DNA of 64,000 bases, from the IMG/VR virus record IMGVR_UViG_3300009177_000028, positions 140,388-204,387 of that record; one strand, 5' to 3'. The notes beneath the pieces were generated by a model. The model was not told the DNA's origin. It worked only from the letters and a program-made list of their open reading frames with translations, and did no database searches. Positions 1,500 through 17,778 of this stretch are shown one piece after another. Each line of letters opens with the position of its first letter. Position 1 is the stretch's first letter. A program made the translations under genes and the position numbers.

Positions 1500-2183
1500 A
1501 TGATCATGCGCCCCCAAACATTTGATCAGCTATTCCGATTCAGATCCCATTGTCTATGTGGATCTGAACTATCTACATTCTTTCCATATGGATCAAAGCT
1601 AAGAGACGATTATACATTCGTTAATTCTGTCGGTAGTCATCACATTGATGAGACTAGTAGTAAAGTAGTCTTCCTGTGCAACCTAACCGCCAATACCTCT
1701 CCCTATGGGCGAGTAGATTTCATGATGGAATGTTATGTTTCATCTCCTACTTTTAAATTGACGGCGACTAAAGAGTCCAAGAATATAATGTCCGCAGAAG
1801 ATTTCGTGAAGATTCATTTCACGGAGGATATTCAACAGGCGCAATGTATTACTTTAAAACGTATATGCTCTAAGGGAAACCTATGTGATTATCATTATGG
1901 TCTTTCCACCCAGCCCATTCTTTTTGATTTCAAGAGGAAAGAAATTAAACCAATTGATCTGGCTGAAGAATCATTTAGGATCAAGAATGATAAAGGTCTT
2001 GGATTCTACTTTAGAACCAATTTCACTGACGGGACAACTACCATTACCTACACTTCCCCGCATTCAGCCTTCGTAATTGGGACGCAGGAATCTATACAAA
2101 TGAAATCCGAAAAATTCCTCAAGTACCCGCTGAACCGAGAATTTTTATTAAATAAGGTTAAAACATTGCTCCTGTTTTCTTGA
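1500..2183 (+). CDS. Zn-ribbon/FS-tail family member 1 (long form)
   Basis: HCLCGSEL near N-terminus; ends LNKVKTLLLFS-TGA; track start 1467, ATG 1500 preferred. Confidence 0.85.
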   Translation: MIMRPQTFDQLFRFRSHCLCGSELSTFFPYGSKLRDDYTFVNSVGSHHIDETSSKVVFLCNLTANTSPYGRVDFMMECYVSSPTFKLTATKESKNIMSAEDFVKIHFTEDIQQAQCITLKRICSKGNLCDYHYGLSTQPILFDFKRKEIKPIDLAEESFRIKNDKGLGFYFRTNFTDGTTTITYTSPHSAFVIGTQESIQMKSEKFLKYPLNREFLLNKVKTLLLFS

Positions 2184-2224
2184 CCGCCCGTGGTTATACT
2201 ATTTGGGCAGAGGTAAAAGTAACC

Positions 2225-3064
2225 ATGAAACGTCTCGGACCTATTTTATTCATTTCTGCGGTAGTATGTGTATCGTGTACACACGAAGATAATAAGAAGC
2301 TTTCTCCCACGGAAGATGTGCTCCGGCCATCCCTACCGCCAACAAGCTCGGTTGGACTTCCCCAAACCGCCCCTACAGTAGACGCCGCCCCAGCAGGTAA
2401 ATGCCCGGCAGATATGGTGGAAGTGGAGGGTGATTTCTGTCCTAACGTAGATCAAACCTGTATTAAGGTTGATAAGAGTATTCACAACGTTAACGGCTAT
2501 GCTAAGTGTGATGAATTTGCCCCCACCAAATGCTTATCGAAGCAACGAGTCCATATGCATTTTTGTATGGATCGTTATGAATGGCCAAATAAAAAAGAGG
2601 CCCGCCCATTGGTTATGCTAACCTGGAATGATATGAAACGTGAATGTGGGCAGATTGGTAAGAGAATCTGTGTAGATCATGAGTGGTCTCTGGCGTGTGA
2701 AGGGCCTGAAATTCTTCCCTATCCGTATGGGTTGGTGCGAGACGCCACCGCCTGTAATATCGACCATCCGCAAAAGCCTGATGCCAATATCAATAACATG
2801 AGCAAAGAGAATGTGGAATATCTATGGCAGGGCGTTTCTTCTGGTTCCATGGAAAGATGCGTTTCACCTTATGGCGTCCATGATATGACCGGGAACGTAG
2901 ACGAAAGCGTAGTCAATTCTGAGGGCAATCCATATCACAGCGCTGAGATGGGCGGTCATTGGGTAAAAGGTGCCCGCAATAGGTGCCGCCCCAAAACAAC
3001 CATTCATAATGAAGACTTTGCCTTTTATGAAATCGGCGGCCGTTGCTGCAAAGATATCAAATGA
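2225..3064 (+). CDS. formylglycine-generating-enzyme (FGE-sulfatase/SUMF1-EgtB-PvdO fold) lipoprotein
   Basis: lipobox VVCVSC; CPADMVEV, FCMDRYEWPN, EWSLACEG, PYPYG, SPYGVHDMTGNVDE, GGRCC motifs; Cys-rich style typical of myxobacterial members. Confidence 0.85.
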   Translation: MKRLGPILFISAVVCVSCTHEDNKKLSPTEDVLRPSLPPTSSVGLPQTAPTVDAAPAGKCPADMVEVEGDFCPNVDQTCIKVDKSIHNVNGYAKCDEFAPTKCLSKQRVHMHFCMDRYEWPNKKEARPLVMLTWNDMKRECGQIGKRICVDHEWSLACEGPEILPYPYGLVRDATACNIDHPQKPDANINNMSKENVEYLWQGVSSGSMERCVSPYGVHDMTGNVDESVVNSEGNPYHSAEMGGHWVKGARNRCRPKTTIHNEDFAFYEIGGRCCKDIK

Positions 3065-3708
3065 ACCTAACAGAGTTTGTGGAGTATAGGGAACAATGCC
3101 CTATTTGTGATTCCAAACTCCACTTCATTTTTCATTCTAAAAAGTGGCAAAGCATGCGATATGAAGATGATCGCTTACTTGTAATTTTTCGCATGGACTC
3201 CATTAAAAAGCACCAGCAAGACTATAAGGTAGGCTACTCATTTGGAATGAAAGATAATTCTTGGTATGTAGAGTTCTTTTCTAAAGATCAAAAGAGGTTT
3301 GAAGAAGAATCTCCAGAGCACCTGCGTAATAGGTTTAAAGAATTAGATAAGAACTTAAAATACTACCGATTTTACAAGTACTGTACATCTTGTTGTCGTT
3401 ATAATTACTCTTCTAATACCTTTATGTTAAATCAGAAAACTGGCCATATAGACAATTTATGCTTGGGTAACGAGTATTTTGGATTGTCACTTCCATTGGA
3501 GGATGGTAGGTACCGCATCTGTAAATTAAATAATGACTACATATTAAATATGAGTTCAATCTCTTTCTCTAAGGAAAAGAGTAACGTGTGGGCTAGGGCA
3601 GACTCATCAACGAATGAGATGAGTTTTATTCAGATTCCAAGTCTGATTAAGTTTACTACTCATGATGAAACCATTGCCCGAATTAATAAGCTAATGGTCT
3701 TCTCTTAA
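3061..3708 (+). CDS. Zn-ribbon/FS-tail family member 2 (long form)
   Basis: CPIC and CTSCC; ends IARINKLMVFS-TAA; ATGA overlap at 3061-3064. Confidence 0.85.
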   Translation: MNLTEFVEYREQCPICDSKLHFIFHSKKWQSMRYEDDRLLVIFRMDSIKKHQQDYKVGYSFGMKDNSWYVEFFSKDQKRFEEESPEHLRNRFKELDKNLKYYRFYKYCTSCCRYNYSSNTFMLNQKTGHIDNLCLGNEYFGLSLPLEDGRYRICKLNNDYILNMSSISFSKEKSNVWARADSSTNEMSFIQIPSLIKFTTHDETIARINKLMVFS

Positions 3709-4235
3709 AGGAAAGCGCCCATCTTTTTAATGGCTTGCATCCATCTAATAATGTCTACCACAGTATCTACTGGAACATTTTGGGCAGAGCTAGAAATGCC
3801 GTTATCAAACCATTGAAGCCACTTTCTACCAAAGAATCTATTATCTTTAGACCAATCCATTCGGAAATCCATGTTGCAAGGATTACCTGATGGAGTTTTG
3901 TATTTCTTCTCCCAGACCTCAATGTCCATGGTAAGGTCTACGCCTTTCCCAAATTTATCTGGATAGCCATGGTATCTTTCAATCTTAATTAGGAAGTCAC
4001 CCACCTTTATATTCATGCACTTATATAATGCCTCTTGGATGCTGTCTTTCCTGCATTTGGTTACATCCACTACCCCATGATGGTTATGTATTCTAATCTT
4101 TTCTTTGGCAGGTGGGTCAGCCCAGATCCAGGCTTCATCCGGTGGGTTTAAAGGCTCATCCTCATCCGAGTCGTATTGCTGATCGGTTAACTCCTCTAAA
4201 AGTTTGAGGTATTCTTCTTTAGAAATGGAAGTCAT
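3705..4235 (-). CDS. hypothetical protein, paralogue of 8298-8732
   Basis: shares I.EAL.K, D.RF...W and DII...(K)..FL with 8298-8732; tail-to-tail TTAA overlap. Confidence 0.8.
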   Translation of the reverse strand: MTSISKEEYLKLLEELTDQQYDSDEDEPLNPPDEAWIWADPPAKEKIRIHNHHGVVDVTKCRKDSIQEALYKCMNIKVGDFLIKIERYHGYPDKFGKGVDLTMDIEVWEKKYKTPSGNPCNMDFRMDWSKDNRFFGRKWLQWFDNGISSSAQNVPVDTVVDIIRWMQAIKKMGAFL

Positions 4236-4283
4236 GGCTTATTATTAAATATAACCGGTTATTAATAAATTTGTATTTAATAC

Positions 4284-4940
4284 ATGGACGCTAACAAGTT
4301 ACTTAAAAGGGCCATTTACTTTCATTCATTGGCCACTTCTAGCGAAGAGATGCCAGACAATTCTAAGGACTTGAAAACTATTCTCAAGAATATAGAAGGT
4401 CTGGAAAACTACAACTCTCGCAAGGAATATGCAGAAAAGAACCTAAAGCATTTGTCTTCAAGCTCTTCTCGTATCGTCTATTCTACCAGTAAAGATACTA
4501 TTATTAAGTTAGCTAAGAATGATAAAGGTATTGCTCAGAATAAAGCTGAGTGCAACCCTAAGATGAAGTCTAAGTTTTTGAACGAAGTAATCGGTCATGC
4601 CACCAATTATTCTTGGATGGAGACCCATTATTTGGATAAGATCACGGCCAAGGAATTTAATGAGATGACTGGGCTTGATTTTGATGATTTTGGAGAAAGT
4701 ATCCGTTATGGTTTAAAAAATGTTTCCGGCAACACTGACAAAGAAAAGCCAGCTAACTTCGACAAAGTGTCGGAATCGGAAATATATAAGGAGATGTTTA
4801 GGATCGGTAAAGAGTTCAAGCTAATGCCAGGTGACTTAGCAAGAATCTCTTCTTGGGGGACTAAAGATGGCCGCCCAGTTCTTATCGATGCTGGTCTTAC
4901 CAAAGACGTATTCTCCGAGTATTATGAATCTTCCTCATGA
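4284..4940 (+). CDS. protein-kinase-like fold protein
   Basis: SSSSRIVY (degenerate Gly loop), IIKLAKN..GIAQNKAE (Lys/Glu), GDLARISSWG, RPVLIDAG. Confidence 0.6.
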   Translation: MDANKLLKRAIYFHSLATSSEEMPDNSKDLKTILKNIEGLENYNSRKEYAEKNLKHLSSSSSRIVYSTSKDTIIKLAKNDKGIAQNKAECNPKMKSKFLNEVIGHATNYSWMETHYLDKITAKEFNEMTGLDFDDFGESIRYGLKNVSGNTDKEKPANFDKVSESEIYKEMFRIGKEFKLMPGDLARISSWGTKDGRPVLIDAGLTKDVFSEYYESSS

Positions 4941-5536
4941 TTAAATTTTCTTCTTTCAAAGAAGCCATTAACTACCAGCCCGTATGTCCGTTATGTCGTA
5001 GCCAACTACACATTAACGATAGAGATTTGGCCGCTGACTATGGCTTCGAATACCGTGGCGATAAACGTGAGAGAATCTCTTTCTTCGTTAACCGACGAGA
5101 AGATGATACTCTAACTATTGATCCGGAAACTGATGAAGTTGAACTACTTTATGCTAACAGAATGCCACCCAGTATTCCTAATTACAACAGTCCAACACAT
5201 TACACTAACCCTCCAAAAGCATACAATGGAAGATTTCTTCACGCTCTAACTATTGATTGTAAGAGCTGCTGTCAATATGGTTTTACTCTACAACTTCATT
5301 TTGATTTGACAGAACAAAAGTTAGCTTCTGCCTTTCTAAATTCTGAAACCGTAAATATTACGGAATGTGAAATGGTACATGAAATCAAGAATATTTATGC
5401 TACCGAAAAGACTCACTATACTTATTTCCCAAGGGACGGTAGCTGCAAGCAAACCACTCTCCCTTTGATTGCTTTAGACTTATCTAATCCATTAGAGACG
5501 GTGGCGCGCATTCGTAAGCTATTAATTTTTTCATGA
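4937..5536 (+). CDS. Zn-ribbon/FS-tail family member 3 (long form)
   Basis: CPLC, CKSCC; ends VARIRKLLIFS-TGA. Confidence 0.85.
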   Translation: MIKFSSFKEAINYQPVCPLCRSQLHINDRDLAADYGFEYRGDKRERISFFVNRREDDTLTIDPETDEVELLYANRMPPSIPNYNSPTHYTNPPKAYNGRFLHALTIDCKSCCQYGFTLQLHFDLTEQKLASAFLNSETVNITECEMVHEIKNIYATEKTHYTYFPRDGSCKQTTLPLIALDLSNPLETVARIRKLLIFS

Positions 5537-6240
5537 GCCTTTCTGAGTTTTTAACATTTAGTCAGCAGTGTCCCATTTGCGGCGAGTCCCTAAACTTGTA
5601 CATGCAATGGATTAATTTTACTTGTTTTAAGGCTACTTTACTGGAACCAAATCTTTATCAATTTGATCCCTTCCTCCGAAATAATATGGTTTTACAACAG
5701 GTGGAGGACGATGATTATATGCTTTTGAAGAACAATGGGGACACCATAGAAACCCAAATGTCCTCCAGCAAGATTCTCCAAGAGGCCAAGAAATACCACA
5801 TATACTTCTTTTATCTTTGCAATCCATTAGGGTTCCAAAAGAAGAAATATGGAGACTATCAAATTAACCTATATAAAGGATGTTACTATCGAGATAGCGC
5901 CATTATGGAATTTCAAAGGAATGAAGACCAAGATAATAAATCTTGGAAATTAACATACCTAGATAAAGATCATAAACATTTATCTAATAAATGTGAATCA
6001 TTCAGTTTTAAACGTACTCTTAATAATATAGAAAGGGTTTATATGCTAGACCTAAACTATGATCAAAAGGTTACTACCATATGGCACTATTCTGTTACGG
6101 AAGAAGAAAAGAAGATTGAGTCATTCGAGCCCAAGATATTTGAAAAGAAGATGCCTCTACTTAAAAATAGACCTAGATTAGGATTAGAAGATAGGGACAA
6201 ACTAATAGATAGATTTGATTCCTGGATTATTATGTCATGA
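5533..6240 (+). CDS. Zn-ribbon/FS-tail family member 4 (long form)
   Basis: CPIC; ends [14 protein letters not shown]. Confidence 0.8.
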   Translation: MSLSEFLTFSQQCPICGESLNLYMQWINFTCFKATLLEPNLYQFDPFLRNNMVLQQVEDDDYMLLKNNGDTIETQMSSSKILQEAKKYHIYFFYLCNPLGFQKKKYGDYQINLYKGCYYRDSAIMEFQRNEDQDNKSWKLTYLDKDHKHLSNKCESFSFKRTLNNIERVYMLDLNYDQKVTTIWHYSVTEEEKKIESFEPKIFEKKMPLLKNRPRLGLEDRDKLIDRFDSWIIMS

Positions 6241-6632
6241 GTAAAATTGTACTTTGTCCCGATCACTATTATAATTGTCCCATTTGTGGGAAGCCCTGCG
6301 ATGTGGTAGAGCAGGAAGGGTTTAATTTACAAATTAGGTTGCAAGGCTCATGCCAGGTATTTTATTGCTACAACCCACTTGTCACAGACCCTTTGCATTA
6401 TTATAGTCACATAGTGGAGAAAACCAATCCTAACAAGCTAGCCTTCCATGAGTTCTCCTTAAACCTAGGGAATAAAAGCGTATTATTCTCCAACAACTTT
6501 CTGATTCAGAAGAGCTTAATTAAGAATAACAAAGACTCTAAGCCTCTCGAATTGGGTTTTGTTATCATGCCAGATTTTCCAAACCTTGATTCTCTGAAGA
6601 AAAAAGTTAGAACTGCCATTACATTTTCATGA
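6237..6632 (+). CDS. Zn-ribbon/FS-tail family member 5
   Basis: CPIC; ends [19 protein letters not shown]. Confidence 0.85.
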
Positions 6633-7726
6633 AAACGATACTTCAACTGGTTGAATCCTGTCAGGATAAAGTAAAAATCCTGGAAGAGATGATTCCTGTC
6701 AAAAAACATCAGAATAGACTGGCCGAGCTTGACGAACGAGTCTCGATGGACGGAGATCTATGGAATGATCCAAGAGCCGCTGCCGCCCTTATGAAAGAAA
6801 GGCAAAAGCTATCAGACCTTCTAGAGACTATGAAGTACTTCCATGATCAGTCTGAATTCTACTCTGAATGCTGGAAGGTCATGCCTAATGAAATGGATGA
6901 AATGGTCCCGGCCATGTCCCTGTTAGAAGCGACCATGGATAGCTTTGAGTTTAAACAGATGCTCAAAGACCCAGTAGATGACAGTGCCGCCATTGTATCT
7001 ATCAACGCAGGCGCAGGCGGCCTTGAGGCAGCCAATTGGGTAACCATGCTACTCCGCATGTACTCCCGTTATGCAGATTCTTATAAATTCAAGGTGGAGC
7101 TTCTAGATATGAAGCCTTCCGAAGAACATAGCGCCATCTGTACAGACTCAGTTTCCATTAGGGTAGAAGGCCCATATGCCTACGGGTTTCTAAAGGGTGA
7201 GGCTGGCGTTCATAGGTTGATTCGTAACTCTCCATTCAATGCTGGGGATGCCCGCCATACTTCCTTTGCGGCAGTAGCCGTCACGCCCGACATTGAAGAC
7301 ACTATTGATATCGTCATTAATGAAAAAGATATAGAAATCACCACCATGAGAGCCTCTGGAGCTGGTGGACAGAATGTCAACAAGGTTGAAAGCGCAGTCC
7401 GTTTGAAGCACTTACCAACCGGCATAGTTATCAACTCTCGTTCTGAGCGAGACCAGCATACCAATCGTCGTTTAGCCATGAAGATGTTAAAGGCTAAGCT
7501 ATATGATTTAGAGATGCGCAAGAAGATGTCCGAGAAGGAAAAATATCTGATGAGCATGTCGGATAACGCTTTCGGAAACCAAATGCGTACCTATACTTTG
7601 ACCCCCTATCAGCTTGTCAAGGACGAAAGAACCGACCATCAAGTAAGGGACGCCGACAGCGTCCTAGATGGTGATATCCAAGGGTTCCTTATCTCTTATT
7701 TGCGTTTTAGAGATAAACTATTATAA
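6629..7726 (+). CDS. prfB: peptide chain release factor 2 (no programmed frameshift)
   Basis: 365 aa; [24 protein letters not shown] (SPF = RF2 specificity motif), [22 protein letters not shown] (GGQ). Confidence 0.96.
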
Positions 7727-8732: not shown

Positions 8733-9025
8733 CTCTTTAATTCGTATCCTCCGAGGAGATGCTCGTTGTCATCTATGACCTTAATGACATCCTCGGTTAG
8801 CTCATCATCACGATAGTAGCCATAGATGGCCCCACCTAAACCTAATGCAGCTTTATGTACTTTTTCACCATACAAAAAGTACATCCCGATACCAAGTTTA
8901 TCACAATCAAGTATCTCAAAATGGTACCCGATGTCTGACTTAAAAACACGAAGAGTGAAGCGCGTATCGATAGATTTATTTAGAACAATTTCAGTTTTCA
9001 TGTAGAGGTATATATCATGGATCAC
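8729..9025 (-). CDS. hypothetical protein
   Basis: 98-aa ORF with ATGA overlap into 8298-8732. Confidence 0.7.
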   Translation of the reverse strand: MIHDIYLYMKTEIVLNKSIDTRFTLRVFKSDIGYHFEILDCDKLGIGMYFLYGEKVHKAALGLGGAIYGYYRDDELTEDVIKVIDDNEHLLGGYELKR

Positions 9026-9346
9026 TTGTGCCCCATTTGCCAGCGAAAGCTAACTGCGGAAGATGAAAGGAATGAAATTACCGATTATCATTGCTTTCCT
9101 CCGCCCAACGATCATCACTTTAGTAAGCGTATAAAGAACGATCAAGTTCAGAAGATTAAAATTCGTCTTAGCCCAGACGGCAATAAGCTATACCTCAAGA
9201 TTAACTTCGATGAGGGTTACTCTCAAGTCTGGACTAGGCCCGATGATGAGTCATCTAGGATTAAGATCAATCATGTCTTTGAGCCCGACCTTAGTGACCT
9301 AAACGCCCTTCAACAGAAGCTCCGTACCTACCTAATCTTCTCATGA
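9017..9346 (+). CDS. Zn-ribbon/FS-tail family member 7
   Basis: CPIC; ends LQQKLRTYLIFS-TGA. Confidence 0.88.
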   Translation: MDHLCPICQRKLTAEDERNEITDYHCFPPPNDHHFSKRIKNDQVQKIKIRLSPDGNKLYLKINFDEGYSQVWTRPDDESSRIKINHVFEPDLSDLNALQQKLRTYLIFS

Positions 9347-9699
9347 AAGCACCGACCCATTGTCCCAAATGTGGGGACGCTTTAGTTAATGATTTCTATG
9401 AACGGAAATCGCGCAATATCATAATCAAACGTTGTAAAACTCGCCCTGATCATCAATTCCAATGCGTAGTAGGTGAGAATGATACTGACATGCACAGTGC
9501 CACCGTTGCCGTTTCTGTCAATCCTTTGATTAGAGTGGCTTGGCGATTTGACGAGAAGACCTTAGCAGTAGCTAAGGGAACTATAGAAGAAATGATAAAG
9601 AGAGGGGATGATGAAGAATTTTTACCCTTCTTTATGCCAAACTTTAAAGATTATAATAAGCTAATTAAGAAACTCAGAACATATATTACTTTCTCATGA
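9343..9699 (+). CDS. Zn-ribbon/FS-tail family member 8
   Basis: CPKC; ends LIKKLRTYITFS-TGA. Confidence 0.88.
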   Translation: MKAPTHCPKCGDALVNDFYERKSRNIIIKRCKTRPDHQFQCVVGENDTDMHSATVAVSVNPLIRVAWRFDEKTLAVAKGTIEEMIKRGDDEEFLPFFMPNFKDYNKLIKKLRTYITFS

Positions 9700-10112
9700 C
9701 CCCTATGTTTATCTCCATGGCTTGCGGCTTCTGTCGTAAGCCTCTCGAATTTCAAGAGAGGCACTCTGGAGATACTCATTTTGATCTCTATATCTGTCGA
9801 GACTGTCAGGCCCCGAAACATCAAACCCTTTACCGACAACTATATAATAAACAAGGGTTTGTTTTATTATGTGATTATGTTAGAATTGATGAATGGTTTA
9901 TTACAAGATACTATCGCCCTACCTCTAAAGGATCCAAAAGTAACTATTCCATTATTTTTAAAGAAGCGATAGGCATCATAGATGGGTCCGTAGACATGGA
10001 GCCCATCTCTCTTAATAAGCCGGTTTGTGAGGTGGACTGTATTTTAGATTTGCCGCTTAATGATATCGAATTACTGAAGCATAAACTAAGCATTTGGACT
10101 ACTTTTTCCTAA
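9696..10112 (+). CDS. Zn-ribbon/FS-tail family member 9
   Basis: CGFC, CRDC; ends LKHKLSIWTTFS-TAA. Confidence 0.88.
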   Translation: MTPMFISMACGFCRKPLEFQERHSGDTHFDLYICRDCQAPKHQTLYRQLYNKQGFVLLCDYVRIDEWFITRYYRPTSKGSKSNYSIIFKEAIGIIDGSVDMEPISLNKPVCEVDCILDLPLNDIELLKHKLSIWTTFS

Positions 10113-10128: not shown

Positions 10129-10500
10129 TTGCGCAGGGTTATATACGAGTATATGGACGATACTCTGCACTGCCCTATTTGCGGCAATAAAATGCGCACG
10201 GTGAACATAAAGCAACTATATGAAAGAACAGGGAATTGGGCGGAACGCACCTGCAATGGAATGAATCATTCTCTGCAAGTGGTTGCCACTCCAAAAGGGA
10301 AGGTTGATTTACTTAAACTGTCACTCAATCCTAAATACTCAAAATTTTTAGAAATTGATTTTGTCAATCAAAAATGTCGCATTATCTGTATGAAAGATAG
10401 TAAGCCAGATTATATTGACATAGCTAAGATGATTGAGCCAGACTTTCCGGATCTGGTTAAGCTAAAGGAAAGAGTGCTGCTATATGTTACCTTCTCATGA
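10129..10500 (+). CDS. Zn-ribbon/FS-tail family member 10
   Basis: CPIC; ends PDFPDLVKLKERVLLYVTFS-TGA; alternative start ATG 10153. Confidence 0.85.
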   Translation: MRRVIYEYMDDTLHCPICGNKMRTVNIKQLYERTGNWAERTCNGMNHSLQVVATPKGKVDLLKLSLNPKYSKFLEIDFVNQKCRIICMKDSKPDYIDIAKMIEPDFPDLVKLKERVLLYVTFS

Positions 10501-10832
10501 AAACACCATGTCCATTTTGTCGTTCTGAACTTGAAGAGTTTAAAGATAAATTCATTACCACCCATGCCTGTTATGATTCTGCCTGCATCAACGATGATAT
10601 GCCAAGGTATAAGGAAATCTACGAAAACACTTCCGAGTCGTTAATAGAACGATACTTCATGATGGGCGGATACTATATCCAAGTAAGCTATAAGAACAAT
10701 TGGACAGTTATTTCTAGATTAGAAGCATGTCTCCTTTTTGATTCAGTCCAAATACCTACCGCCCTTAAAGTAGATTTAACCAATCCATTAGATATTCTCA
10801 ATAAAGTTAAACTTTTTATGATATTTTCATGA
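10497..10832 (+). CDS. Zn-ribbon/FS-tail family member 11
   Basis: CPFC; ends ILNKVKLFMIFS-TGA. Confidence 0.88.
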   Translation: MKTPCPFCRSELEEFKDKFITTHACYDSACINDDMPRYKEIYENTSESLIERYFMMGGYYIQVSYKNNWTVISRLEACLLFDSVQIPTALKVDLTNPLDILNKVKLFMIFS

Positions 10833-11194
10833 ATGATTATATATTTTGTCCATTTTGCGGAGGCGTTGAATGGATAACCGATAAATCGGGTTATGCGGGA
10901 AATGGACGATTAGAGTCTCATAAGTGTAAAGACTGTAAGAAATTTACTTATGTTAATCATTTTGAAAAAACTACTTCGCCAGGTGGACTAGAGCATTTTA
11001 GAAAAAGTAGATTCTCGATTGATGCTAGAATTGATCCTTATCAAGTAACAGTCTTTTATCATAAAGACTCAACCCAATTTAGGGACATTCACTCTGGATA
11101 CGTTATTTTAGTATTAAAGCAAGCAGTTACATTTAATTGGTATAAAAACGAAGAGCTAGTAGATAAAATTAAGAAGTATGTGGTGTTCTCGTGA
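10829..11194 (+). CDS. Zn-ribbon/FS-tail family member 12
   Basis: CPFC, CKDC; ends LVDKIKKYVVFS-TGA. Confidence 0.88.
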   Translation: MNDYIFCPFCGGVEWITDKSGYAGNGRLESHKCKDCKKFTYVNHFEKTTSPGGLEHFRKSRFSIDARIDPYQVTVFYHKDSTQFRDIHSGYVILVLKQAVTFNWYKNEELVDKIKKYVVFS

Positions 11195-11577
11195 TTTGGC
11201 AATATAAAGACTGTCCACTTTGTGGCTGCGAAATGAAGGTAGTACAAGGGGATCCCAACGAGCCTTTGTATCTAATGAGGTGTCCCACCCAACTAGAGCT
11301 GCCCCAAAAGACCTACTTCACCCTATCAGAAGGTGGACTTATCTTAAACGAAATCATGACTCATTTCGAACTAGAGTTTCAGAATCATAAACCAATCTAT
11401 CAAGTAGTTAGAATCTATCCATTTGCTATTAAATCTTATGATGATGTCTCTAATATTTACAGATATGATGCTAGGATGAATTCTAGATTCATTGCCGAGA
11501 CTCCATATATAAATCTCCCTTGGAACGATAAAGAAAAGATAATCAAGAAACTCTCAACCTATACAGTATTCTCATGA
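11191..11577 (+). CDS. Zn-ribbon/FS-tail family member 13
   Basis: CPLC; ends IIKKLSTYTVFS-TGA; GTGA overlap. Confidence 0.88.
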   Translation: MIWQYKDCPLCGCEMKVVQGDPNEPLYLMRCPTQLELPQKTYFTLSEGGLILNEIMTHFELEFQNHKPIYQVVRIYPFAIKSYDDVSNIYRYDARMNSRFIAETPYINLPWNDKEKIIKKLSTYTVFS

Positions 11578-11975
11578 CGCTACCCTGCCCCGTTTGCCAC
11601 GAAATTATGCAAACAACCGAAACCACTAATCTTATCATGTGCCCAAGGCGCAAGATCCATGTCCCATCTCTTAAACAAGACATAGAGACGGTTCATGCCA
11701 TCTACCATTTGAATTCAGAGAATAAGCCCATCCTAAAGGTCATCGAAGTTCTTCCATATACTTTTGAGATTCATGATAATCCTAAGGGCCTTAAACAAAC
11801 CAGAATAATTAAAACCATTAAATGGAATGACCGTAAATCATCTAGAACTACTAGGCTCAGGACAACCTCTCTGGAACGAGAGAACCTAATTACCGTTCCA
11901 GGAACAGTTAATTGCCAATGGGATGACCCCAAGCAAGTCCAAGAACGTGTCAACATGTATATGTTATTCTCATGA
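11574..11975 (+). CDS. Zn-ribbon/FS-tail family member 14
   Basis: CPVC; ends VQERVNMYMLFS-TGA. Confidence 0.88.
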   Translation: MTLPCPVCHEIMQTTETTNLIMCPRRKIHVPSLKQDIETVHAIYHLNSENKPILKVIEVLPYTFEIHDNPKGLKQTRIIKTIKWNDRKSSRTTRLRTTSLERENLITVPGTVNCQWDDPKQVQERVNMYMLFS

Positions 11976-12343
11976 TATTCTCTACCGATCGTTGTCCATT
12001 ATGCAACCAGAAACTCAAATTAGAAATAATTGACGGTTCCTCGGGTAAGGTCGCCTTTCTCTACTACTGCGAGAAAAGAGAAATAACTCGTAATGAAAGC
12101 AATACAAGTTCCGTTGCAGTCCGACACTACGAGAATAGATCTTATCAAGGCGGAGAATTATCCTTTATGATTATTCCGCCTTTTGAATTGATGCATTCTC
12201 AAGCTAAGAAGTTAACTTCTGTTCGTGCGGCAAGTCCGTATCAACCCAAGAAAATTATTTTTGAAGTGCCCCTGCTTGACTTAGACTATTCCAAGACACA
12301 CCTTGTAATCGATAAAATCAAATTACTTACCCTATTCTCATGA
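11972..12343 (+). CDS. Zn-ribbon/FS-tail family member 15
   Basis: CPLC; ends VIDKIKLLTLFS-TGA. Confidence 0.88.
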   Translation: MIFSTDRCPLCNQKLKLEIIDGSSGKVAFLYYCEKREITRNESNTSSVAVRHYENRSYQGGELSFMIIPPFELMHSQAKKLTSVRAASPYQPKKIIFEVPLLDLDYSKTHLVIDKIKLLTLFS

Positions 12344-12687
12344 ATAATTTTGCCATCGATTTCTGCCCCCTGTGTGACAAACCCCTACGGTTACGCCGTG
12401 TCTCCAAGGTCAATATCTATGATTGCCCCACCACTTACGAAGCCGTAACTGCCAATGGCATTAAGCAAAGAAGCCATTATGAGGTAGAGTGTGATGATGG
12501 CCAATGCATTCAACACGTCTATGTCTTACCCTGGAGTATTGATACTTTCGACAAGTATAATAAGTCCCGAGTTCATAAACTACACAATGGGCACCGCTGG
12601 AAGTTTGTAGTAGAATTACCGCCCATTCATCCAGACAAAGAAGATAAGCTTAAAGAGAGAATTAATCTACTGGTGGCGTATCTATGA
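12340..12687 (+). CDS. Zn-ribbon/FS-tail family member 16
   Basis: CPLC; ends LKERINLLVAYL-TGA. Confidence 0.85.
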   Translation: MNNFAIDFCPLCDKPLRLRRVSKVNIYDCPTTYEAVTANGIKQRSHYEVECDDGQCIQHVYVLPWSIDTFDKYNKSRVHKLHNGHRWKFVVELPPIHPDKEDKLKERINLLVAYL

Positions 12688-13088
12688 CTGAAGAACAAGA
12701 GTTTCAAAACTACCACCTACCAAAACCATGTAAGTTTTGTTCTCAGCCGGCCGGCTATGCACCCATTGATGCGCAGTCCGAAACTAATCGTCTCTGCGTT
12801 TATTTCTGCCATACTTGTAATGCTGAGTATGTCTATTTTAGAGATAATAAGATTATCAGTGAATCACTCTATACCGGCATTAATAATAGAGTTTATCGAT
12901 ATACCATTGCTTATGGCGATATTGGGCAAATTTGGTATGTGGAAAAGCCTGGTATCCCTGGTGCAGTCGTCAACAAGGGGATGAAGTTGCTGAAGAGTTT
13001 CAACCCCGGCAAAAACTGTGATACGACTCCTATCCTAACTCCCCAAAATGTAAATGAGAAGCTAAGAACATGGCTGGTCTTTCTTTGA
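12684..13088 (+). CDS. Zn-ribbon/FS-tail family member 17
   Basis: CKFC, CHTC; ends TPQNVNEKLRTWLVFL-TGA. Confidence 0.85.
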   Translation: MTEEQEFQNYHLPKPCKFCSQPAGYAPIDAQSETNRLCVYFCHTCNAEYVYFRDNKIISESLYTGINNRVYRYTIAYGDIGQIWYVEKPGIPGAVVNKGMKLLKSFNPGKNCDTTPILTPQNVNEKLRTWLVFL

Positions 13089-13480
13089 GATGTCATCTTT
13101 GTAACGCCGAGCTTCGCCCCAACAATTATGCTGATTGGGAAATTAGGAATAGAAAGCAAATTACCTACGCCTGTCCTCCAAGCCATCCTCCCCATGCCGC
13201 GATTGAAATGATCCATCCAGATCTTGAGATCAATTACTATAGCTTCCTCTTCCAAATTAAAGACCAACACTATAAACTGTGTTCCCGTGGCTACTCTATT
13301 ATTAGAGAAGCAGATTTCCCCATTACAGTACTTTATAAAGTAACCGTTGCAAAACAGGGACATACAGAGCACCAGATTCTTAGGATTCCTAGATTTTATC
13401 CTCTTGAATTGGCGCAGAGTTTCAATATTCACTGCCAAACAGTTTATCAAAAAATCAAACCACTAATAGTATTCTCATGA
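13085..13480 (+). CDS. Zn-ribbon/FS-tail family member 18
   Basis: TTG start in TTGA overlap; CHLC; ends VYQKIKPLIVFS-TGA. Confidence 0.85.
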   Translation: MRCHLCNAELRPNNYADWEIRNRKQITYACPPSHPPHAAIEMIHPDLEINYYSFLFQIKDQHYKLCSRGYSIIREADFPITVLYKVTVAKQGHTEHQILRIPRFYPLELAQSFNIHCQTVYQKIKPLIVFS

Positions 13481-13896
13481 AGCACTTCCAAACCAGAACC
13501 TGCCCGCTATGCAGCAAGAAGCTCAAACTGGGAGACGAAGACTCCCTCCATGACTTCTACTGCGAGGACTTCTACCTTAGAGGATACGGGATGAATGAGT
13601 TTTTCCTGCTGCTAGACGATGCCACTTCCGTCAGCAGTAGGCGCCGTACCCACATAAAGGAGCCCCATTACTCTATTGATGTAACGGAAGGAAAATACCG
13701 ACAGAGCACTATTATTCCTCCGTACTGGATTATCAGTACCGAGGAAGATAACAAGTCTCGCATCTATAAATTTGGACAAGAGATTAGCCTTCCATCAGAA
13801 CAAACTCTTCTGATGGAAGTCCCCCTAATTGTCCCCAGCGACTATCTTCCTGAACAATTCGCTAAGAAGATTAAGAACCTAGTCATCTTTACATGA
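13477..13896 (+). CDS. Zn-ribbon/FS-tail family member 19
   Basis: CPLC; ends FAKKIKNLVIFT-TGA. Confidence 0.85.
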   Translation: MKHFQTRTCPLCSKKLKLGDEDSLHDFYCEDFYLRGYGMNEFFLLLDDATSVSSRRRTHIKEPHYSIDVTEGKYRQSTIIPPYWIISTEEDNKSRIYKFGQEISLPSEQTLLMEVPLIVPSDYLPEQFAKKIKNLVIFT

Positions 13897-14236
13897 AGTG
13901 TCTCAGAAGCTCTTGGAGCCCTGCTATATCGAATGGCTTCTTGAGGTAGGTACCTGGTTTGAATTCCTTGTCGAGATCGGCAGAGGCACTCATAACCACG
14001 ATGGGGGTAGAGTTCAGTCCCGCCTTCTTGGCGGCCACTAGAAACTCTCGTCCGCTCATGATGGACATCATCAGGTCAAGCAGGACCAAGCGGGGATGGT
14101 GGTCTTGGAGCCAGTTCAGGGCGTCTTGGCCGTTGTTGCAGGAGGCCATTTCCCACCCACTGTCCTCTAGGACAAAGCCCAGCACTTCTCGGAGGTCGAG
14201 GTCGTCATCCACAACCAGCACTTGAGGTTTATCCAC
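13889..14236 (-). CDS. stand-alone response regulator receiver (CheY-like)
   Basis: VLVVDDD, LVLLDLMM (phospho-Asp), IVVMSA, LKKPF; GTG start 14236 after SD-like AAGG. Confidence 0.92.
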   Translation of the reverse strand: MDKPQVLVVDDDLDLREVLGFVLEDSGWEMASCNNGQDALNWLQDHHPRLVLLDLMMSIMSGREFLVAAKKAGLNSTPIVVMSASADLDKEFKPGTYLKKPFDIAGLQELLRHFM

Positions 14237-14241
14237 AACTT

Positions 14242-15396
14242 CTACCTTTCTTCCAAAACGCCGCTCATGGGCAGGCACAACCTGAAAACAGACCCAGGCC
14301 CATTAGGTGGGTCGTGAATCTCGATCCGCCCGCCAAGGCTCTTGGCGGCCTCTCCGGCGAGCCAAAGGCCAATCCCCATCCCGGCGTACTGGTCACCCGA
14401 GACGGCTCGCTCGAACCTCTGGAAAATGCGCTTGCGGTCTTTCTCAGGCACACCAATGCCATAGTCCCTCACATCGACCACAACCCAGCCGTCTACATGA
14501 GCTACATTGATATCAACAGGTTTTCCACAACCATATTTCATCGCGTTGTTGACCAGATTGGTCATAATCTGCTCAACCTTACTGACATCCCAAGTGCCGC
14601 GAATGCGCACTTTTGGCAAGTCAAGGCGAATCTCAATTCCCTGCCGTTTTGCCAAATCGTCATTCCTGAGCACAGTCTCTCGGATGACCTCACACACATC
14701 CGCATCTTGGAACGTCACTTGCGTGGGACTGGAGCGCCGTGAGACCTCTAGCAGGTCGCGTACAAGAGCGTTGAGCTTTTGTCCAGACCTCTCCACCGCT
14801 CCCAACCTCCTCAGAATCTCTGCCCTTGACAGCTCTTCCTTTGTCAATTTCTGCACCAAGTTCTGCGATGTCAAAAGAATACTAGAGATTGGCGTTTTCA
14901 ACTCATGAGCTGCCACTGAGATAAAGTCCTCTCTGATACTAATTGCCTGCTTGAGCTGCTCTCGATATTGAGATAGCTCAGTTATATCAACAAAGGAGAC
15001 GATTCCTTTGCCATCCTTCCCATGAGCTGGAGGGAGAAGCGCACCCTGACAGAGAAAGGTTCGCTTGTTGCCGGTCTCGGCGCAGGTCCAGTTAATCTCA
15101 TAGGCGGTAAAGGTCTCACCTCGGGCCACCCGTCTGGAGGGGTAGTCCCTTTCGGCAATTTGACTCCCATCGTTCTCGAAAAGCCCGCCCCGCCATCTTG
15201 CCTCATAGAGGCGAAAGGCTTCCGCATTCTCTTCGATACCGGCCGGCTCCACCTCTGGAACGACGTATTTGAGCGCGGTAGCGTTCGCATACAAGATCCG
15301 TGCCGTGTCCAGCTCGACTACAATAACTGCACTGGGAAGCGTATTCAGTAGCGCTTCCATCCACTTACGATGAGCCTGCTCTTCGAGTGTTATCAT
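14242..15396 (-). CDS. PAS-domain sensor histidine kinase
   Basis: PAS-like LNTLPSAVIVVE..ILYAN; H-box AHELKTP; N-box NLVNNAMKY; G1 DYGIG; F-box IFQRF; G2 GMGIGL; GC higher than flanks. Confidence 0.93.
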   Translation of the reverse strand: MITLEEQAHRKWMEALLNTLPSAVIVVELDTARILYANATALKYVVPEVEPAGIEENAEAFRLYEARWRGGLFENDGSQIAERDYPSRRVARGETFTAYEINWTCAETGNKRTFLCQGALLPPAHGKDGKGIVSFVDITELSQYREQLKQAISIREDFISVAAHELKTPISSILLTSQNLVQKLTKEELSRAEILRRLGAVERSGQKLNALVRDLLEVSRRSSPTQVTFQDADVCEVIRETVLRNDDLAKRQGIEIRLDLPKVRIRGTWDVSKVEQIMTNLVNNAMKYGCGKPVDINVAHVDGWVVVDVRDYGIGVPEKDRKRIFQRFERAVSGDQYAGMGIGLWLAGEAAKSLGGRIEIHDPPNGPGSVFRLCLPMSGVLEER

Positions 15397-15528
15397 GCGG
15401 TACCCCTCAGAGACTGTATGACCATGTCTCAGCAAGACGCAAGCACAATCGCCCAGCAAAAATCATGCCATGTTGCCTTTTGCCCCACCTGTGGTTAATT
15501 TTCCATCAGGAACTGGAATCTGAATTTT

Positions 15529-15942
15529 ATGAACTGCCCACTCTGCCAAACACCGCTTTCTATTGATGCTAGCGATGTGTATAAAGATCATCCAACTTAT
15601 AAATGTCCCATTCAAGTTAGTGGAGACGAATATACTCATTCCACTCATTACATCAAATACTTTTCGGCAGATTGGACCTACTCCCATTACAGAGAAGAGG
15701 CTGTCCTCCCACCCTACCGATTGATTAATTATTATAATTTTCGACAGGGCAAGAGTGATTACTCTGCTATCCAGGAGTATAAGTTTGTCAAGCATGCCCT
15801 CCAAAAGAATGGTCAGGTCAAGCGCTTCCCTTGCTTCGACCGATATAAGTTTCAAACGTTGATGCGCTTCGATCAATGCCTCTCCATCCCAGATAGTGAA
15901 CACTTCGTCAATCGAATCAAAACCCTCTTGGTCTTCTCATGA
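15529..15942 (+). CDS. Zn-ribbon/FS-tail family member 20
   Basis: CPLC; ends FVNRIKTLLVFS-TGA. Confidence 0.88.
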   Translation: MNCPLCQTPLSIDASDVYKDHPTYKCPIQVSGDEYTHSTHYIKYFSADWTYSHYREEAVLPPYRLINYYNFRQGKSDYSAIQEYKFVKHALQKNGQVKRFPCFDRYKFQTLMRFDQCLSIPDSEHFVNRIKTLLVFS

Positions 15943-16298
15943 GAACTTGTCCATTATGTAATAAAACTCTAATTAAGCAATCGGCCCAAGATGCTTGTGG
16001 GTACCAAGAGGATTGGTATTGTCCCGATGAGCTTCGTTTGGCCTCGGGACGTAAAGTCAATCACTATCGAGAATATCCTGAATTAGGATACACCGATATA
16101 TACTTACCGCCCTACCGCATCCGCAATCAAGATGGTCAATCCAAAATTGGTTATCTCTCCCAGTACAAAACTAAACGAAGAGTTCGTACTACTAGAGGGA
16201 AATACTATTTCAAAACCATCATCACCTGCCCACAACTCCACCCAGATACCGAAGAGAAACTTCTTAATAGAGTTAAACTCCTCCTATTAATATCATGA
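15939..16298 (+). CDS. Zn-ribbon/FS-tail family member 21
   Basis: CPLC; ends LLNRVKLLLLIS-TGA. Confidence 0.85.
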   Translation: MRTCPLCNKTLIKQSAQDACGYQEDWYCPDELRLASGRKVNHYREYPELGYTDIYLPPYRIRNQDGQSKIGYLSQYKTKRRVRTTRGKYYFKTIITCPQLHPDTEEKLLNRVKLLLLIS

Positions 16299-16675
16299 TG
16301 AATGGATTCAATCAATATCTTTGCGACTTTTGCCAGCAACCTTGCAGACGATCCACTGGAGCTAAAGAGTATGGGAAACATGCCCGATGGCAACGCTGCC
16401 TCTCATGCAAAGTCTCCTACGCCATTAGCCTAACAGGGCAAGTCAAATGCCGAATCTTTCGAGGCCCTGGAGAGGATGAATTCTATCAACTTAGAATCAA
16501 TTACAAAGAGAATATTTCTACCATCTGCTTCCTTAAAAAGGATAGTTGGATGTATAACAACCGCAAACAAACTACTTATAACTCAACCCAAATAGTTACC
16601 TTGGATCATTGCATTAAAGATATCTCGCCCCAAAATGTCCAAGATAAAATCAAATTGTATATTCTATTCTCATGA
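16295..16675 (+). CDS. Zn-ribbon/FS-tail family member 22
   Basis: CDFC, CLSC; ends SPQNVQDKIKLYILFS-TGA. Confidence 0.88.
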   Translation: MMNGFNQYLCDFCQQPCRRSTGAKEYGKHARWQRCLSCKVSYAISLTGQVKCRIFRGPGEDEFYQLRINYKENISTICFLKKDSWMYNNRKQTTYNSTQIVTLDHCIKDISPQNVQDKIKLYILFS

Positions 16676-17034
16676 TTAAATGTCATTTCTGCCAACGAAC
16701 TTGCCGTAAGGTGGTTCCCAATCAAAAAGAATTTGATCGCACTCCCTACTGGCGCTGCGATTATCATGGCTCAACCGTTGTTAGACAATATTACATCTCC
16801 GTTCAAGCGGAACCACTTTGCCTATCTCATATTGGTTTGATTACCTATTATAAAGATCTTCAATATGGAGCCTATCTTTTCTTTGATGAAGCTCACTTCC
16901 CCCATAAATTTAGAATCGATAAGATTAATCCATATCCACGGACCACTCAAACCGTTATGACCCTGGACTTCCATCCAGATATCACACCGGAAAATGTCCA
17001 GCAGAAACTCCCGACCTATATTATGTTCTCATGA
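16672..17034 (+). CDS. Zn-ribbon/FS-tail family member 23
   Basis: CHFC, CDYH; ends TPENVQQKLPTYIMFS-TGA. Confidence 0.88.
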   Translation: MIKCHFCQRTCRKVVPNQKEFDRTPYWRCDYHGSTVVRQYYISVQAEPLCLSHIGLITYYKDLQYGAYLFFDEAHFPHKFRIDKINPYPRTTQTVMTLDFHPDITPENVQQKLPTYIMFS

Positions 17035-17369
17035 ATTACTATTGCCTCTTCTGCGATCAACGATGCAAGAAAACTCACCCGGAAGCCTCCTGGTGGAAAT
17101 GCAGGCCATGCAAGGTCTCCTTCCATGATGATGACAATGGCCTTTGGAAAATTTCTTTCTCCGTCAACAAACCAGATGCCCTTTATACCTTGGACTTGCT
17201 CCTCAATGAAAATAAAACCGAGCTGTATGTCCTGGGCAGAGATCCCGTTCCCTCCATTATCGATTCCATTATGAATGGAAAGCTAACCATCTCCCTCCCC
17301 TCCATTATGCAAAATGTTAATCCCAATAACGTGGCGGATAAAGTAAAAACATTATTGGTCTTCTCCTGA
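17031..17369 (+). CDS. Zn-ribbon/FS-tail family member 24
   Basis: CLFC, CRPC; ends NPNNVADKVKTLLVFS-TGA. Confidence 0.88.
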   Translation: MNYYCLFCDQRCKKTHPEASWWKCRPCKVSFHDDDNGLWKISFSVNKPDALYTLDLLLNENKTELYVLGRDPVPSIIDSIMNGKLTISLPSIMQNVNPNNVADKVKTLLVFS

Positions 17370-17415
17370 AATTTGCCACGACACAAAGTTTCATTCGATC
17401 CGCCCCATTTCGCGC

Positions 17416-17778
17416 ATGCACCTCAAAACCATTAGCTGCCAACAACGCTGGAGATACTACTGCCCCTTCTGCGACCAAGATATCACCCCGCCCGATGGCT
17501 ACACCATCAGCAGCTTCATCCAATGCCAATTCTGCCCCGTCACCACCAACTTGATCGTCAATGGCTCCATTTCCAATCCCAATATCGCCTATATCCAATT
17601 CCAGCAAGACCAGTTCATGATCGAACTCAATCAGGATGACCAAACCACGGCCCTCTTTGCCGGTCCCGTCAATGCTAGGCTTTCCCAAATGCTCAAGCTA
17701 AGCTACCTGGTCCCCGTCAATCCAAACAATTTCCACAATTGGCTAAGCAAGCTGCTCAACCTAAAAGCTTTCTCTTAA
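17416..17778 (+). CDS. Zn-ribbon/FS-tail family member 25
   Basis: CPFC, CQFC; ends NPNNFHNWLSKLLNLKAFS-TAA. Confidence 0.85.
   Translation: MHLKTISCQQRWRYYCPFCDQDITPPDGYTISSFIQCQFCPVTTNLIVNGSISNPNIAYIQFQQDQFMIELNQDDQTTALFAGPVNARLSQMLKLSYLVPVNPNNFHNWLSKLLNLKAFS

What the first reader, a model, noticed from the sequence alone, without database searches (positions are those of the whole stretch)
1500..17778. Array of 25 hyper-divergent Zn-ribbon proteins sharing an invariant C-terminal ...F-S-COOH tail (candidate adaptor library)
Seen: 25 plus-strand genes (starts 1500, 3061, 4937, 5533, 6237, 7728, 9017, 9343, 9696, 10129, 10497, 10829, 11191, 11574, 11972, 12340, 12684, 13085, 13477, 15529, 15939, 16295, 16672, 17031, 17416) have a Cys pair within about 20 residues of the N-terminus, a barely alignable middle, and a tail such as NKVKTLLLFS, QKLRTYLIFS, DKIKKYVVFS. 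20 of 25 end FS (others MS, YL, FL, FT, IS); 23 of 25 have a penultimate aromatic. The last Ser uses TCA, TCT, TCC or TCG and is kept in genes with no ATGA overlap (ends 3708, 10112, 17369, 17778), so selection acts on the peptide, not just on the overlap. Knowledge: hydrophobic-aromatic-X C-termini (HbYX) dock activators on 20S proteasome alpha-rings, and poxvirus ANK-PRANC proteins pair variable substrate domains with a constant C-terminal docking module. Inference: a diversified set of substrate-recognition modules that all plug into one hub (a protease or chaperone, phage or host) through a free C-terminus. I know no described bacteriophage system like this.
Basis: partly seen in the sequence, partly recalled or inferred. 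Interest (0 to 1): 0.93.

Follow-up and report, generated by a model that had tools for sequence, protein, structure and literature searches.

The report
Expanded zinc-ribbon protein family in megaphage
A giant soil phage carries 25 old, very different copies of a previously undescribed small zinc-binding protein that all end in the same Phe-Ser; the shared end is predicted to be the last turn of a rigid helix, not a loose docking tail, and the function is unknown.

Summary
Window 1500-17778 has 25 plus-strand genes. Twenty-four have an N-terminal CxxC and one has CxC. All share a fixed-length C-terminal motif, and 20 of 25 end in FS.

- **Family size:** it is one homologous family, with 1356 clusters (50% identity) in metagenomes. 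Among the 148 best hits, 119 end in FS and none has a C-terminal extension.
- **Where it occurs:** syntenic arrays lie on 35-480 kb contigs of related low-GC phages, around a phage RF2 gene.
- **Selection is on the peptide:** 21 of 22 members whose stop is not in an ATGA-type overlap still end in FS, using five Ser codons including AGT.
- **Paralogs are old, not fast-evolving:** they are at most 29% identical within the genome, but orthologs between genomes are 45-74% identical with saturated synonymous sites.
- **Predicted structure:** AlphaFold2 (pLDDT 95 and 92) gives a zinc ribbon, a beta meander and a C-terminal helix that runs to the penultimate residue. The long members are a tandem duplication of this module.
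- **No known relatives:** there is no Pfam or PHROG family and no PDB fold match.

The hub-docking adaptor idea stays untested. The rigid helix with no linker argues against a free HbYX-like tail, but a conserved Lys(-9)/Phe(-2) stripe off the core face leaves a constant interface possible. The closest precedent is the roughly 35-copy zinc-ribbon expansion in Bacillus phage G.

The parts
1500..2183 (+). Family member, long form (227 aa), CxC instead of CxxC, ends FS
   Evidence: ortholog in L001
3061..3708 (+). Family member, two-module long form (215 aa), ends FS with a TAA stop and no overlap
   Evidence: AF2 pLDDT 91.8; both halves match the short-family profile
4937..5536 (+). Family member, long form (199 aa), ends FS
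5533..6240 (+). Family member, long form (235 aa), ends MS; weak tail score
6237..6632 (+). Best-conserved member (131 aa), ATGA-coupled to the RF2 gene, ends FS
   Evidence: orthologs 54-66% identical
6629..7726 (+). RF2-type peptide chain release factor embedded in the array (not a family member)
   Evidence: PCRF and RF-1 domains; syntenic in L001, L002 and L004
7728..8303 (+). Family member, long form (191 aa), ends FS with a TAA stop
9017..9346 (+). Family member (109 aa), the one modelled; ends FS
   Evidence: AF2 pLDDT 95, pTM 0.86; helix 95-108
9343..9699 (+). Family member (118 aa), ends FS
9696..10112 (+). Family member (138 aa), ends FS with TCC TAA and no overlap
10129..10500 (+). 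Family member (the start is more likely ATG 10153, giving 115 aa), ends FS
   Evidence: 74% identical to the L001 ortholog
10497..10832 (+). Family member (111 aa), ends FS
10829..11194 (+). Family member (121 aa), ends FS (TCG TGA, GTGA overlap)
11191..11577 (+). Family member (128 aa, GTG start), ends FS
11574..11975 (+). Family member (133 aa), ends FS
   Evidence: P0001, P0011 and P0012 are orthologs
11972..12343 (+). Family member (123 aa), ends FS
12340..12687 (+). Family member (115 aa), ends YL
12684..13088 (+). Family member (134 aa), ends FL; the orthologs also end FL
13085..13480 (+). Family member (131 aa from TTG, or 136 aa from ATG 13070), ends FS
13477..13896 (+). Family member (139 aa), ends FT; the L001 ortholog also ends FT
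13889..15459 (-). Receiver-domain and histidine-kinase genes, about 50% GC, interrupting the array in this phage only (not family members)
   Evidence: absent from the L001, L002 and L004 arrays
15529..15942 (+). Family member (137 aa), ends FS
15939..16298 (+). Family member (119 aa), ends IS
16295..16675 (+). Family member (126 aa), ends FS
16672..17034 (+). Family member (120 aa), ends FS
17031..17369 (+). Family member (112 aa), ends FS with TCC TGA and no overlap
17416..17778 (+). Family member (120 aa), last of the array, ends FS with a TAA stop
   Evidence: P0021

Best explanation
This is a lineage-specific expansion of one previously undescribed small protein domain in a clade of low-GC soil megaphages. 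Relatives sit on 467-480 kb contigs.

The domain:
- An N-terminal zinc ribbon with three invariant Cys and a fourth Cys or His.
- A four- to five-stranded beta meander.
- A 14-residue C-terminal amphipathic helix.

How I think it works (the steps below are inferred unless marked otherwise):
- The roughly 25 copies are ancient, non-redundant paralogs. They appear to be expressed from long polycistronic units coupled by 4-nt ATGA overlaps, with no Shine-Dalgarno sites.
- Each copy uses its variable ribbon and sheet surface to bind a different target, either a host or phage protein or a nucleic acid.
- The invariant helix is the keel of the fold and probably also the surface where two modules pair. 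The long members are covalent two-module versions, which suggests the short ones act as homo- or heterodimers.
- On this view the h-h-F-S-COOH ending is the packed, capping end of that helix. Structure keeps it, and translational coupling helps hold the stop in place. It is not a flexible docking peptide.

Shown here: family membership, conservation, peptide-level selection, the predicted fold, and the internal duplication.
Inferred: target binding, dimerisation, and time of expression.
For: - **One large family.** The profile finds 1356 clusters. All of the 148 best have an N-terminal CxxC, and the match runs to the last residue.
- **Old, retained paralogs.** Identity is at most 29% within the genome but 45-74% between genomes, with pS about 0.8 and pN/pS about 0.3. 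Gene order is conserved in L001, L002 and L004.
- **Confident models.** pLDDT is 95 and 91.8, and the tail is helical to the penultimate residue. Independent BFVD models of relatives superpose at TM 0.8-0.9.
- **A rigid tail.** The conserved [DN]-aromatic-x-[DN] turn sits at -19 to -16 in ungapped register, and positions -15, -12, -8, -5, -4 and -1 fall on one helical face.
- **Long forms are two modules.** By hhalign against the short-family profile, the N-half gives E 4.6e-6 and the C-half gives E 1.2e-8.
- **The tail is not portable.** No other protein family carries it.
- **Coupled operon.** Twenty of 29 gene junctions are 4-nt overlaps, there are no SD motifs, and there is no internal terminator after the one at 1401-1427.
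- **No uniform charge.** pI ranges from 4.6 to 9.8, which fits varied targets better than a uniform DNA-binding role.
Against: - No function is demonstrated. There is no fold match in the PDB, no domain fusion and no annotated relative.
- F(-2) and the hydrophobic -3 position do not lie on the main hydrophobic face of an ideal helix.
- The internal helix of the two-module proteins keeps L..R-F-K-x-L but replaces h-h-F-S with polar residues. The FS ending is therefore not needed for the module fold itself and may have a role specific to the chain end.
- Dimerisation is inferred only from the duplication.
Confidence: 0.4

Rival explanations
1. One reading: an adaptor library. Variable bodies recognise different substrates, and the constant C-terminal end (h-F-S-COOH together with the K(-9)/K(-7) helix surface) plugs every paralog into one hub, such as a protease, chaperone, clamp or ring complex of phage or host.
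For: - The chain end is extremely conserved: F at -2 in 133 of 148, S at -1 in 132 of 148, K/R at -9 in 146 of 148, and no C-terminal extension in any of the 148.
- FS is kept most strictly where there is no overlap constraint, in 21 of 22 cases.
- K(-9) and F(-2) share a helical stripe off the core face.
- The internal helix copy lacks h-h-F-S.
- The pattern loosely fits hydrophobic-aromatic-X.
Against: - The tail is predicted as a rigid helix with no flexible linker.
- The motif is not found on unrelated proteins.
- No hub candidate was identified. The neighbouring peptidases carry lipoprotein signals, so they are likely exported, while the zinc-binding family has no signal peptide.
- The absence of SD sites and the low GC hint at a Bacteroidota-type host. 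From general knowledge that phylum lacks 20S alpha-rings; this is an inference only.
- In HbYX motifs the last residue is free to vary, whereas here Ser is 89% conserved.
Confidence: 0.2
2. A set of sequence-specific nucleic-acid-binding regulators (transcription or translation factors), as Iyer et al. proposed for the zinc-ribbon expansion of Bacillus phage G.
For: - Zinc ribbons commonly bind nucleic acids.
- There is a precedent in PMC7824862.
- The array is interleaved with translation genes: RF2 in all four genomes, an AlaRS-like gene in L002, and IF1 nearby.
- The beta-beta-beta-beta-alpha topology recalls PUR/Whirly and RNA-phage coat proteins, which appear among weak Foldseek hits.
- K/R at -9 and -7 are conserved.
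Against: - Members are not uniformly basic: median pI of the representatives is 7.6, and 21% are below 6.
- The Foldseek matches are not significant (TM at most 0.37).
- No DNA-binding domain is detected.
Confidence: 0.15
3. The proteins are packaged in the virion or injected, or otherwise sorted. The constant C-terminus would be the sorting signal that loads a varied set of anti-defence proteins.
For: - A constant terminal signal on otherwise diverse small proteins.
- From general knowledge, large phages package many ejection proteins.
Against: - There is no evidence of virion association, and no capsid or protease genes lie nearby.
- The known T4 capsid-targeting signal is N-terminal and cleaved.
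- The tail is an integral helix.
Confidence: 0.08
4. The FS ending is a nucleotide-level by-product of the TCATGA stop-start overlap or of a reinitiation signal, with no selection on the peptide.
For: - 41 of 53 overlapping members use TCA TGA.
- Synonymous change is lower in the last two codons (pS 0.44 against about 0.8 elsewhere).
Against: - 21 of 22 non-overlapping members still end in FS, using five Ser codons including AGT.
- Any NNA codon would give the ATGA overlap, so Ser is not required for it.
- Phe at -2 is not constrained by the overlap.
- Non-family genes in the same operon overlap without ending in FS.
Confidence: 0.02

Closest known systems
Zinc-ribbon lineage-specific expansion of Bacillus phage G (about 35 copies; Iyer et al. 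2021, PMC7824862)
   Same: Dozens of small zinc-ribbon proteins expanded within one very large phage genome, with function unknown.
   Different: - There is no detectable homology: gp166 scores Foldseek E 0.047 and TM 0.32, and tblastn against cultured phages finds nothing.
- This family adds a beta meander and an invariant C-terminal helix ending in FS.
- Its orthologs are conserved across a whole phage clade.
HbYX-motif proteasome activators (PAN, Rpt, Mpa, Blm10)
   Same: A hydrophobic-aromatic-X pattern at the extreme C-terminus.
   Different: - HbYX sits on a flexible tail of an AAA+ or HEAT-repeat activator, and its last residue is free to vary.
- Here the residues end a rigid helix of a 110-aa zinc protein.
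- The aromatic is Phe rather than Tyr, and Ser is 89% conserved.
Adaptors with a constant C-terminal docking element (SspB XB peptide; poxvirus ANK-PRANC)
   Same: The concept is the same: a variable recognition part joined to a constant C-terminal part.
   Different: - No linker plus peptide as in SspB.
- No F-box or PRANC domain.
- The constant part is an integral helix of a single domain.
Two-repeat beta-beta-beta-beta-alpha folds (PUR/Whirly-like) and single-repeat relatives that dimerise
   Same: The secondary-structure order is the same, and the family has both one-module and tandem two-module versions.
   Different: Foldseek TM is only 0.16-0.23 to PUR-alpha. Those folds have no zinc ribbon, and no homology is shown.

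Membership tests
Zinc-ribbon superfamily | Two zinc knuckles (CxxC plus a second C..C/H pair) on beta hairpins | tested here: met
   - C5, C8 and C26 are invariant in 149 sequences, and a fourth C or H follows.
- AF2 places beta hairpins at residues 13-25.
- There are scattered sub-threshold hits to about ten Zn_ribbon Pfam models and to PDB zinc-ribbon chains.
- Metal binding itself was not tested.
HbYX proteasome activators | Hb-Y-X at the end of a flexible C-terminal tail | tested here: not met
   The pattern is h-F-S, but it is the end of a confident helix (pLDDT of the last block is 96) with a fixed-length, ungapped lead-in.
HbYX proteasome activators | An activator body (AAA+ ring, PA26/PA28 or Blm10) and a 20S alpha-ring partner | tested here: not met
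   No such domain was found in 149 members. Whether the unknown host has a 20S particle cannot be tested here.
Poxvirus-type ANK/PRANC (F-box-like) adaptors | Repeat domain plus a C-terminal PRANC/F-box domain | tested here: not met
   No ANK, F-box or PRANC hit in Pfam.
Bacillus phage G ZnR expansion | Homology to gp166-type zinc-ribbon proteins | tested here: not met
   Foldseek E 0.047 and TMq 0.32; no tblastn hit in 50,697 phage records. It is an analogy only.
Lar restriction-alleviation family (PF14354) | Score above the Pfam gathering threshold over the domain | tested here: not met
   Two of 149 members hit, best E 1.5e-4. The one hit examined in detail (gene 10829, 17 bits against a cutoff of 28.6) covers only the ribbon.
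PUR/Whirly-like fold | Structural superposition of the beta4-alpha repeats | tested here: not met
   TM 0.16-0.23 and rmsd about 20 A.
RiPP precursor arrays (conserved recognition part plus hypervariable core) | Short, unstructured precursors next to modifying enzymes | tested here: not met
   - Members are 109-235 aa and fold confidently.
- No modifying enzyme is adjacent.
- The FGE-like and C39 genes are stand-alone, and the FGE-like protein carries a lipoprotein signal.

The most novel reading that the evidence does not exclude
The invariant C-terminal helix ending in h-h-F-S-COOH is a common handle. Either it plugs about 25 different recognition modules into one phage or host hub, or it lets the paralogs heterodimerise freely. 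Either way the megaphage would have a combinatorial adaptor or targeting system of a kind not described in phages.
Probability: 0.2. Interest if true: 0.85.

Novelty: new variant of a known kind. Interest (0 to 1): 0.55.

Why it matters
Megaphages of 0.2-0.5 Mb are full of genes of unknown function. This family makes up about 25-30 genes per genome and at least 1356 sequence clusters, yet it has no Pfam or PHROG family and no PDB fold match.

Because it is ancient, non-redundant and syntenic around a phage RF2 gene, it looks like a core toolkit of this clade rather than junk or a transient arms-race product.

If the constant C-terminal element proves to be a shared interface, the family would be a natural library of small zinc-stabilised binders on one scaffold. 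That would be of interest both for how phages take over their hosts and for protein engineering. If not, it is still a well-defined new domain family worth registering and solving.

Tried and rejected
- **Overlap artefact:** rejected by the codon and overlap statistics.
- **Portable tail module:** a tail HMM over all ORFs of five loci finds the tail only on family members. Two conserved minus-strand families that end in AFL and MFL are not significantly related (hhalign P 0.13 and 0.58).
- **Known families:** Pfam on 10 and then 149 members, PHROGs, a profile search of PDB sequences, and Foldseek against the PDB for both models gave nothing beyond generic zinc ribbons.
- **Cultured relatives:** megablast and tblastn against 50,697 phage records found none. 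GTDB genomes also gave none.
- **Domain fusions in longer members:** none.
- **Direct N-half versus C-half comparison of the long form:** not significant (P 0.23). The duplication shows only through the short-family profile.
- **Host from the histidine kinase:** the best genome hit is 24% identical, which is uninformative.
- **Bacteroidota -7 promoter motif TAnnTTTG:** 37 matches against 29.7 expected, not significant.
- **Sigma-70 promoter and terminator scan:** not above shuffled sequence; there is one strong terminator, at 1401-1427.
- **RiPP-precursor reading:** rejected on size and fold.
- **Chimeric-assembly explanation of the GC jump at about 20 kb:** rejected, because the same junction occurs in four assemblies.
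- **Burial of F and S:** could not be measured because model coordinates are not exposed by the tools.

Full report
**Origin of the window.** The window is the last 64 kb of IMG/VR contig IMGVR_UViG_3300009177_000028, which is 204,387 nt long. Window position 1 is contig position 140388. The part holding the finding has 37-42% GC, and so does the contig upstream of the window.

**Check of the observation.**
- All 25 listed starts give plus-strand ORFs with the stated ends.
- Twenty end in FS. The others end in MS, YL, FL, FT and IS. Twenty-three have an aromatic at -2.
- Twenty-four have a CxxC within the first 20 residues. Gene 1500 has CxC.
- Paralogs are 19% identical at the median and 29% at most.
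- Twenty of 29 plus-strand gene junctions are 4-nt ATGA, GTGA or TTGA overlaps. No gene has a Shine-Dalgarno motif.

**One large family.**
- A profile of 20 members finds 1356 clusters (50% identity representatives) at E<=1e-3 among 1.84 billion proteins.
- In the 148 best hits a CxxC is always present in the first 35 residues.
- Of these, 119 end in FS. F is at -2 in 133, S is at -1 in 132, and K/R is at -9 in 146.
- The match always reaches the chain end, so none has an extension.
- The last 20 residues align without gaps as [DN]-aromatic-x-[DN]-x3-[LVI]-x2-[KR]-[ILV]-[KR]-x-[YL]-h-h-F-S.

**Related genomes.**
- Syntenic arrays occur on a 480 kb forest-soil contig (L001), a 35 kb NCBI contig (L002) and a 467 kb NCBI contig (L004). 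Another member sits on a 477 kb contig.
- The shared gene order is: dUTPase, SET and RNase T-like genes on the minus strand; then an FGE-like lipoprotein; long-form members; the best-conserved member coupled to an RF2 gene; and then the run of short members. In the window and in L002 the run is followed by exported peptidases; the L001 and L004 loci end before that point.
- No homolog is present in 50,697 cultured or deposited phage records, and a search with the best-conserved member's orthologs found none in GTDB species genomes.
- BFVD holds family members only from one 'uncultured Caudovirales phage'.

**Selection.**
- For 33 ortholog pairs, synonymous sites are saturated (pS about 0.8).
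- pN/pS is 0.36 in the middle of the protein, 0.30 in the first 30 residues and 0.27 in the last 20.
- The last two residues are 97% identical.
- Pooled over four genomes, 21 of 22 members whose stop is not in an overlap end in FS, using TCA, TCC, TCT, TCG and AGT. Of overlapping members, 42 of 53 end in FS.
- At least 14 of the 25 genes have clear orthologs (42-74% identity) in L001 or L002, in the same order. The distal part of the array shows gain and loss.
- Within the genome there are no recent duplicates. The family is an old toolkit, not a fast-diversifying one.

**Predicted structure.**
- AlphaFold2 on member 9017-9346 with 149 sequences gives pLDDT 95 and pTM 0.86. The model has a zinc-ribbon hairpin, strands 33-40, 43-51, 58-63 and 68-72, a short strand, and helix 95-108 of 109 residues. 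The last block has pLDDT 96.
- The long member 3061-3708 gives pLDDT 91.8 and two beta-plus-helix units, with helices at 86-99 and 201-214.
- Against the short-family profile, hhalign scores the N-half at probability 86.5% (E 4.6e-6) and the C-half at 95.6% (E 1.2e-8). The long forms are therefore tandem duplications of the module. The two halves compared directly are not significantly similar.
- Foldseek finds no PDB match at E<0.001 for either model.
- Pfam and PHROGs have no family for it.

**What the tail is.**
- It is not a free peptide. It is a fixed-length helix after a conserved turn.
- Positions -15, -12, -8, -5, -4 and -1 fall on one helical face.
- It is not a portable module either.
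- Two facts keep a chain-end function open. K/R(-9) and F(-2), the two best-conserved residues, lie on a stripe about 100-115 degrees from the hydrophobic face, and -3 is hydrophobic on the opposite side. Also, the internal helix of the two-module proteins keeps L..R-F-K-x-L but has polar residues in place of h-h-F-S.
- I could not read model coordinates, so burial was not measured.

**Function.**
- Nothing identifies it directly.
- Member pI spans 4.6-9.8, so the proteins are not uniformly basic.
- No domain fusions were found.
- My best reading, at confidence 0.4, is a panel of non-redundant zinc-stabilised binding proteins made from coupled operons. The helix is the keel of the fold and the surface where modules pair, and the FS ending is its packed cap.
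- Rivals are: a common-hub adaptor library (0.2), nucleic-acid-binding regulators as proposed for Bacillus phage G (0.15; PMC7824862), a sorting or packaging signal (0.08), and an overlap artefact (refuted).

**Comparison and novelty.**
- The closest known phenomenon is the roughly 35-copy zinc-ribbon expansion of Bacillus phage G, but there is no homology.
- HbYX, SspB-type and PRANC-type memberships fail on the defining features that could be tested.
- Paper searches found no description of such a phage system.
- I rate it a new variant of a known kind: a new domain family, with a strikingly invariant chain end, within the known theme of zinc-ribbon expansions in very large phages.

Noticed in passing
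window 13889-15459 (minus strand): A histidine kinase (HisKA and HATPase_c) and a stand-alone receiver gene at about 50% GC sit inside the array. They are absent from the arrays of L001, L002 and L004, so this looks like a recent acquisition by this phage. The closest genome hit is only 24% identical.
   Followed up: partly
window 6629-7726 (plus strand): A phage-encoded RF2-type release factor (PCRF and RF-1 domains; SPF and GGQ motifs visible). It overlaps the most conserved family member by ATGA and is syntenic in all relatives. L002 also has an AlaRS-like gene in the array, and an IF1-like gene lies upstream (L004, L010). Eighteen of the 25 family genes stop at TGA.
   Followed up: partly
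window 2180-3064 (+), 17775-18419 (-), 18432-19196 (-), 19310-19852 (-): Three proteins flank the array and carry lipoprotein-type signals: an FGE-sulfatase-like protein, an M10/M12-like metallopeptidase and a trypsin-like peptidase. A stand-alone C39 peptidase lies with them. The metallopeptidase and trypsin-like genes are also found downstream of the array in L002.
   Followed up: partly
window about 20300-64000: GC jumps from about 40% to 52-57%. This block carries ArdC (25238-26131), a phrog_2319 protein (39926-41308; one phage homolog is annotated RecT-like), a primase-like gene (54819-56435) and Ku (57316-58071). The same junction is present in four independent assemblies (L006-L009), so it is not a chimera. 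It may be a foreign block inside a low-GC megaphage.
   Followed up: partly
window 1-18000, plus-strand genes: No Shine-Dalgarno motif lies upstream of any gene, and 20 of 29 junctions are 4-nt start-stop overlaps. Together with the low GC this hints at a Bacteroidota-type host. The TAnnTTTG promoter motif is not significantly enriched.
   Followed up: partly
window 3705-4235 (-) and 8298-8732 (-): Two unrelated minus-strand gene families inside the array end in ...AFL and ...MFL after a basic helix-like stretch, and do so in all four genomes. Their similarity to the family is not significant (hhalign P 0.58 and 0.13).
   Followed up: yes
L010 16841-20633 (contig upstream of the window): A gene of 1333 residues (cut by the locus end) has a weak hit to the ubiquitin-E1 FCCH domain. 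It lies near ThyX, IMPDH and IF1-like genes.
   Followed up: no
window 1401-1427 (plus strand): A strong 12-bp stem terminator followed by a T-run lies just upstream of the first family gene. It probably marks the start of the operon that holds the array.
   Followed up: no
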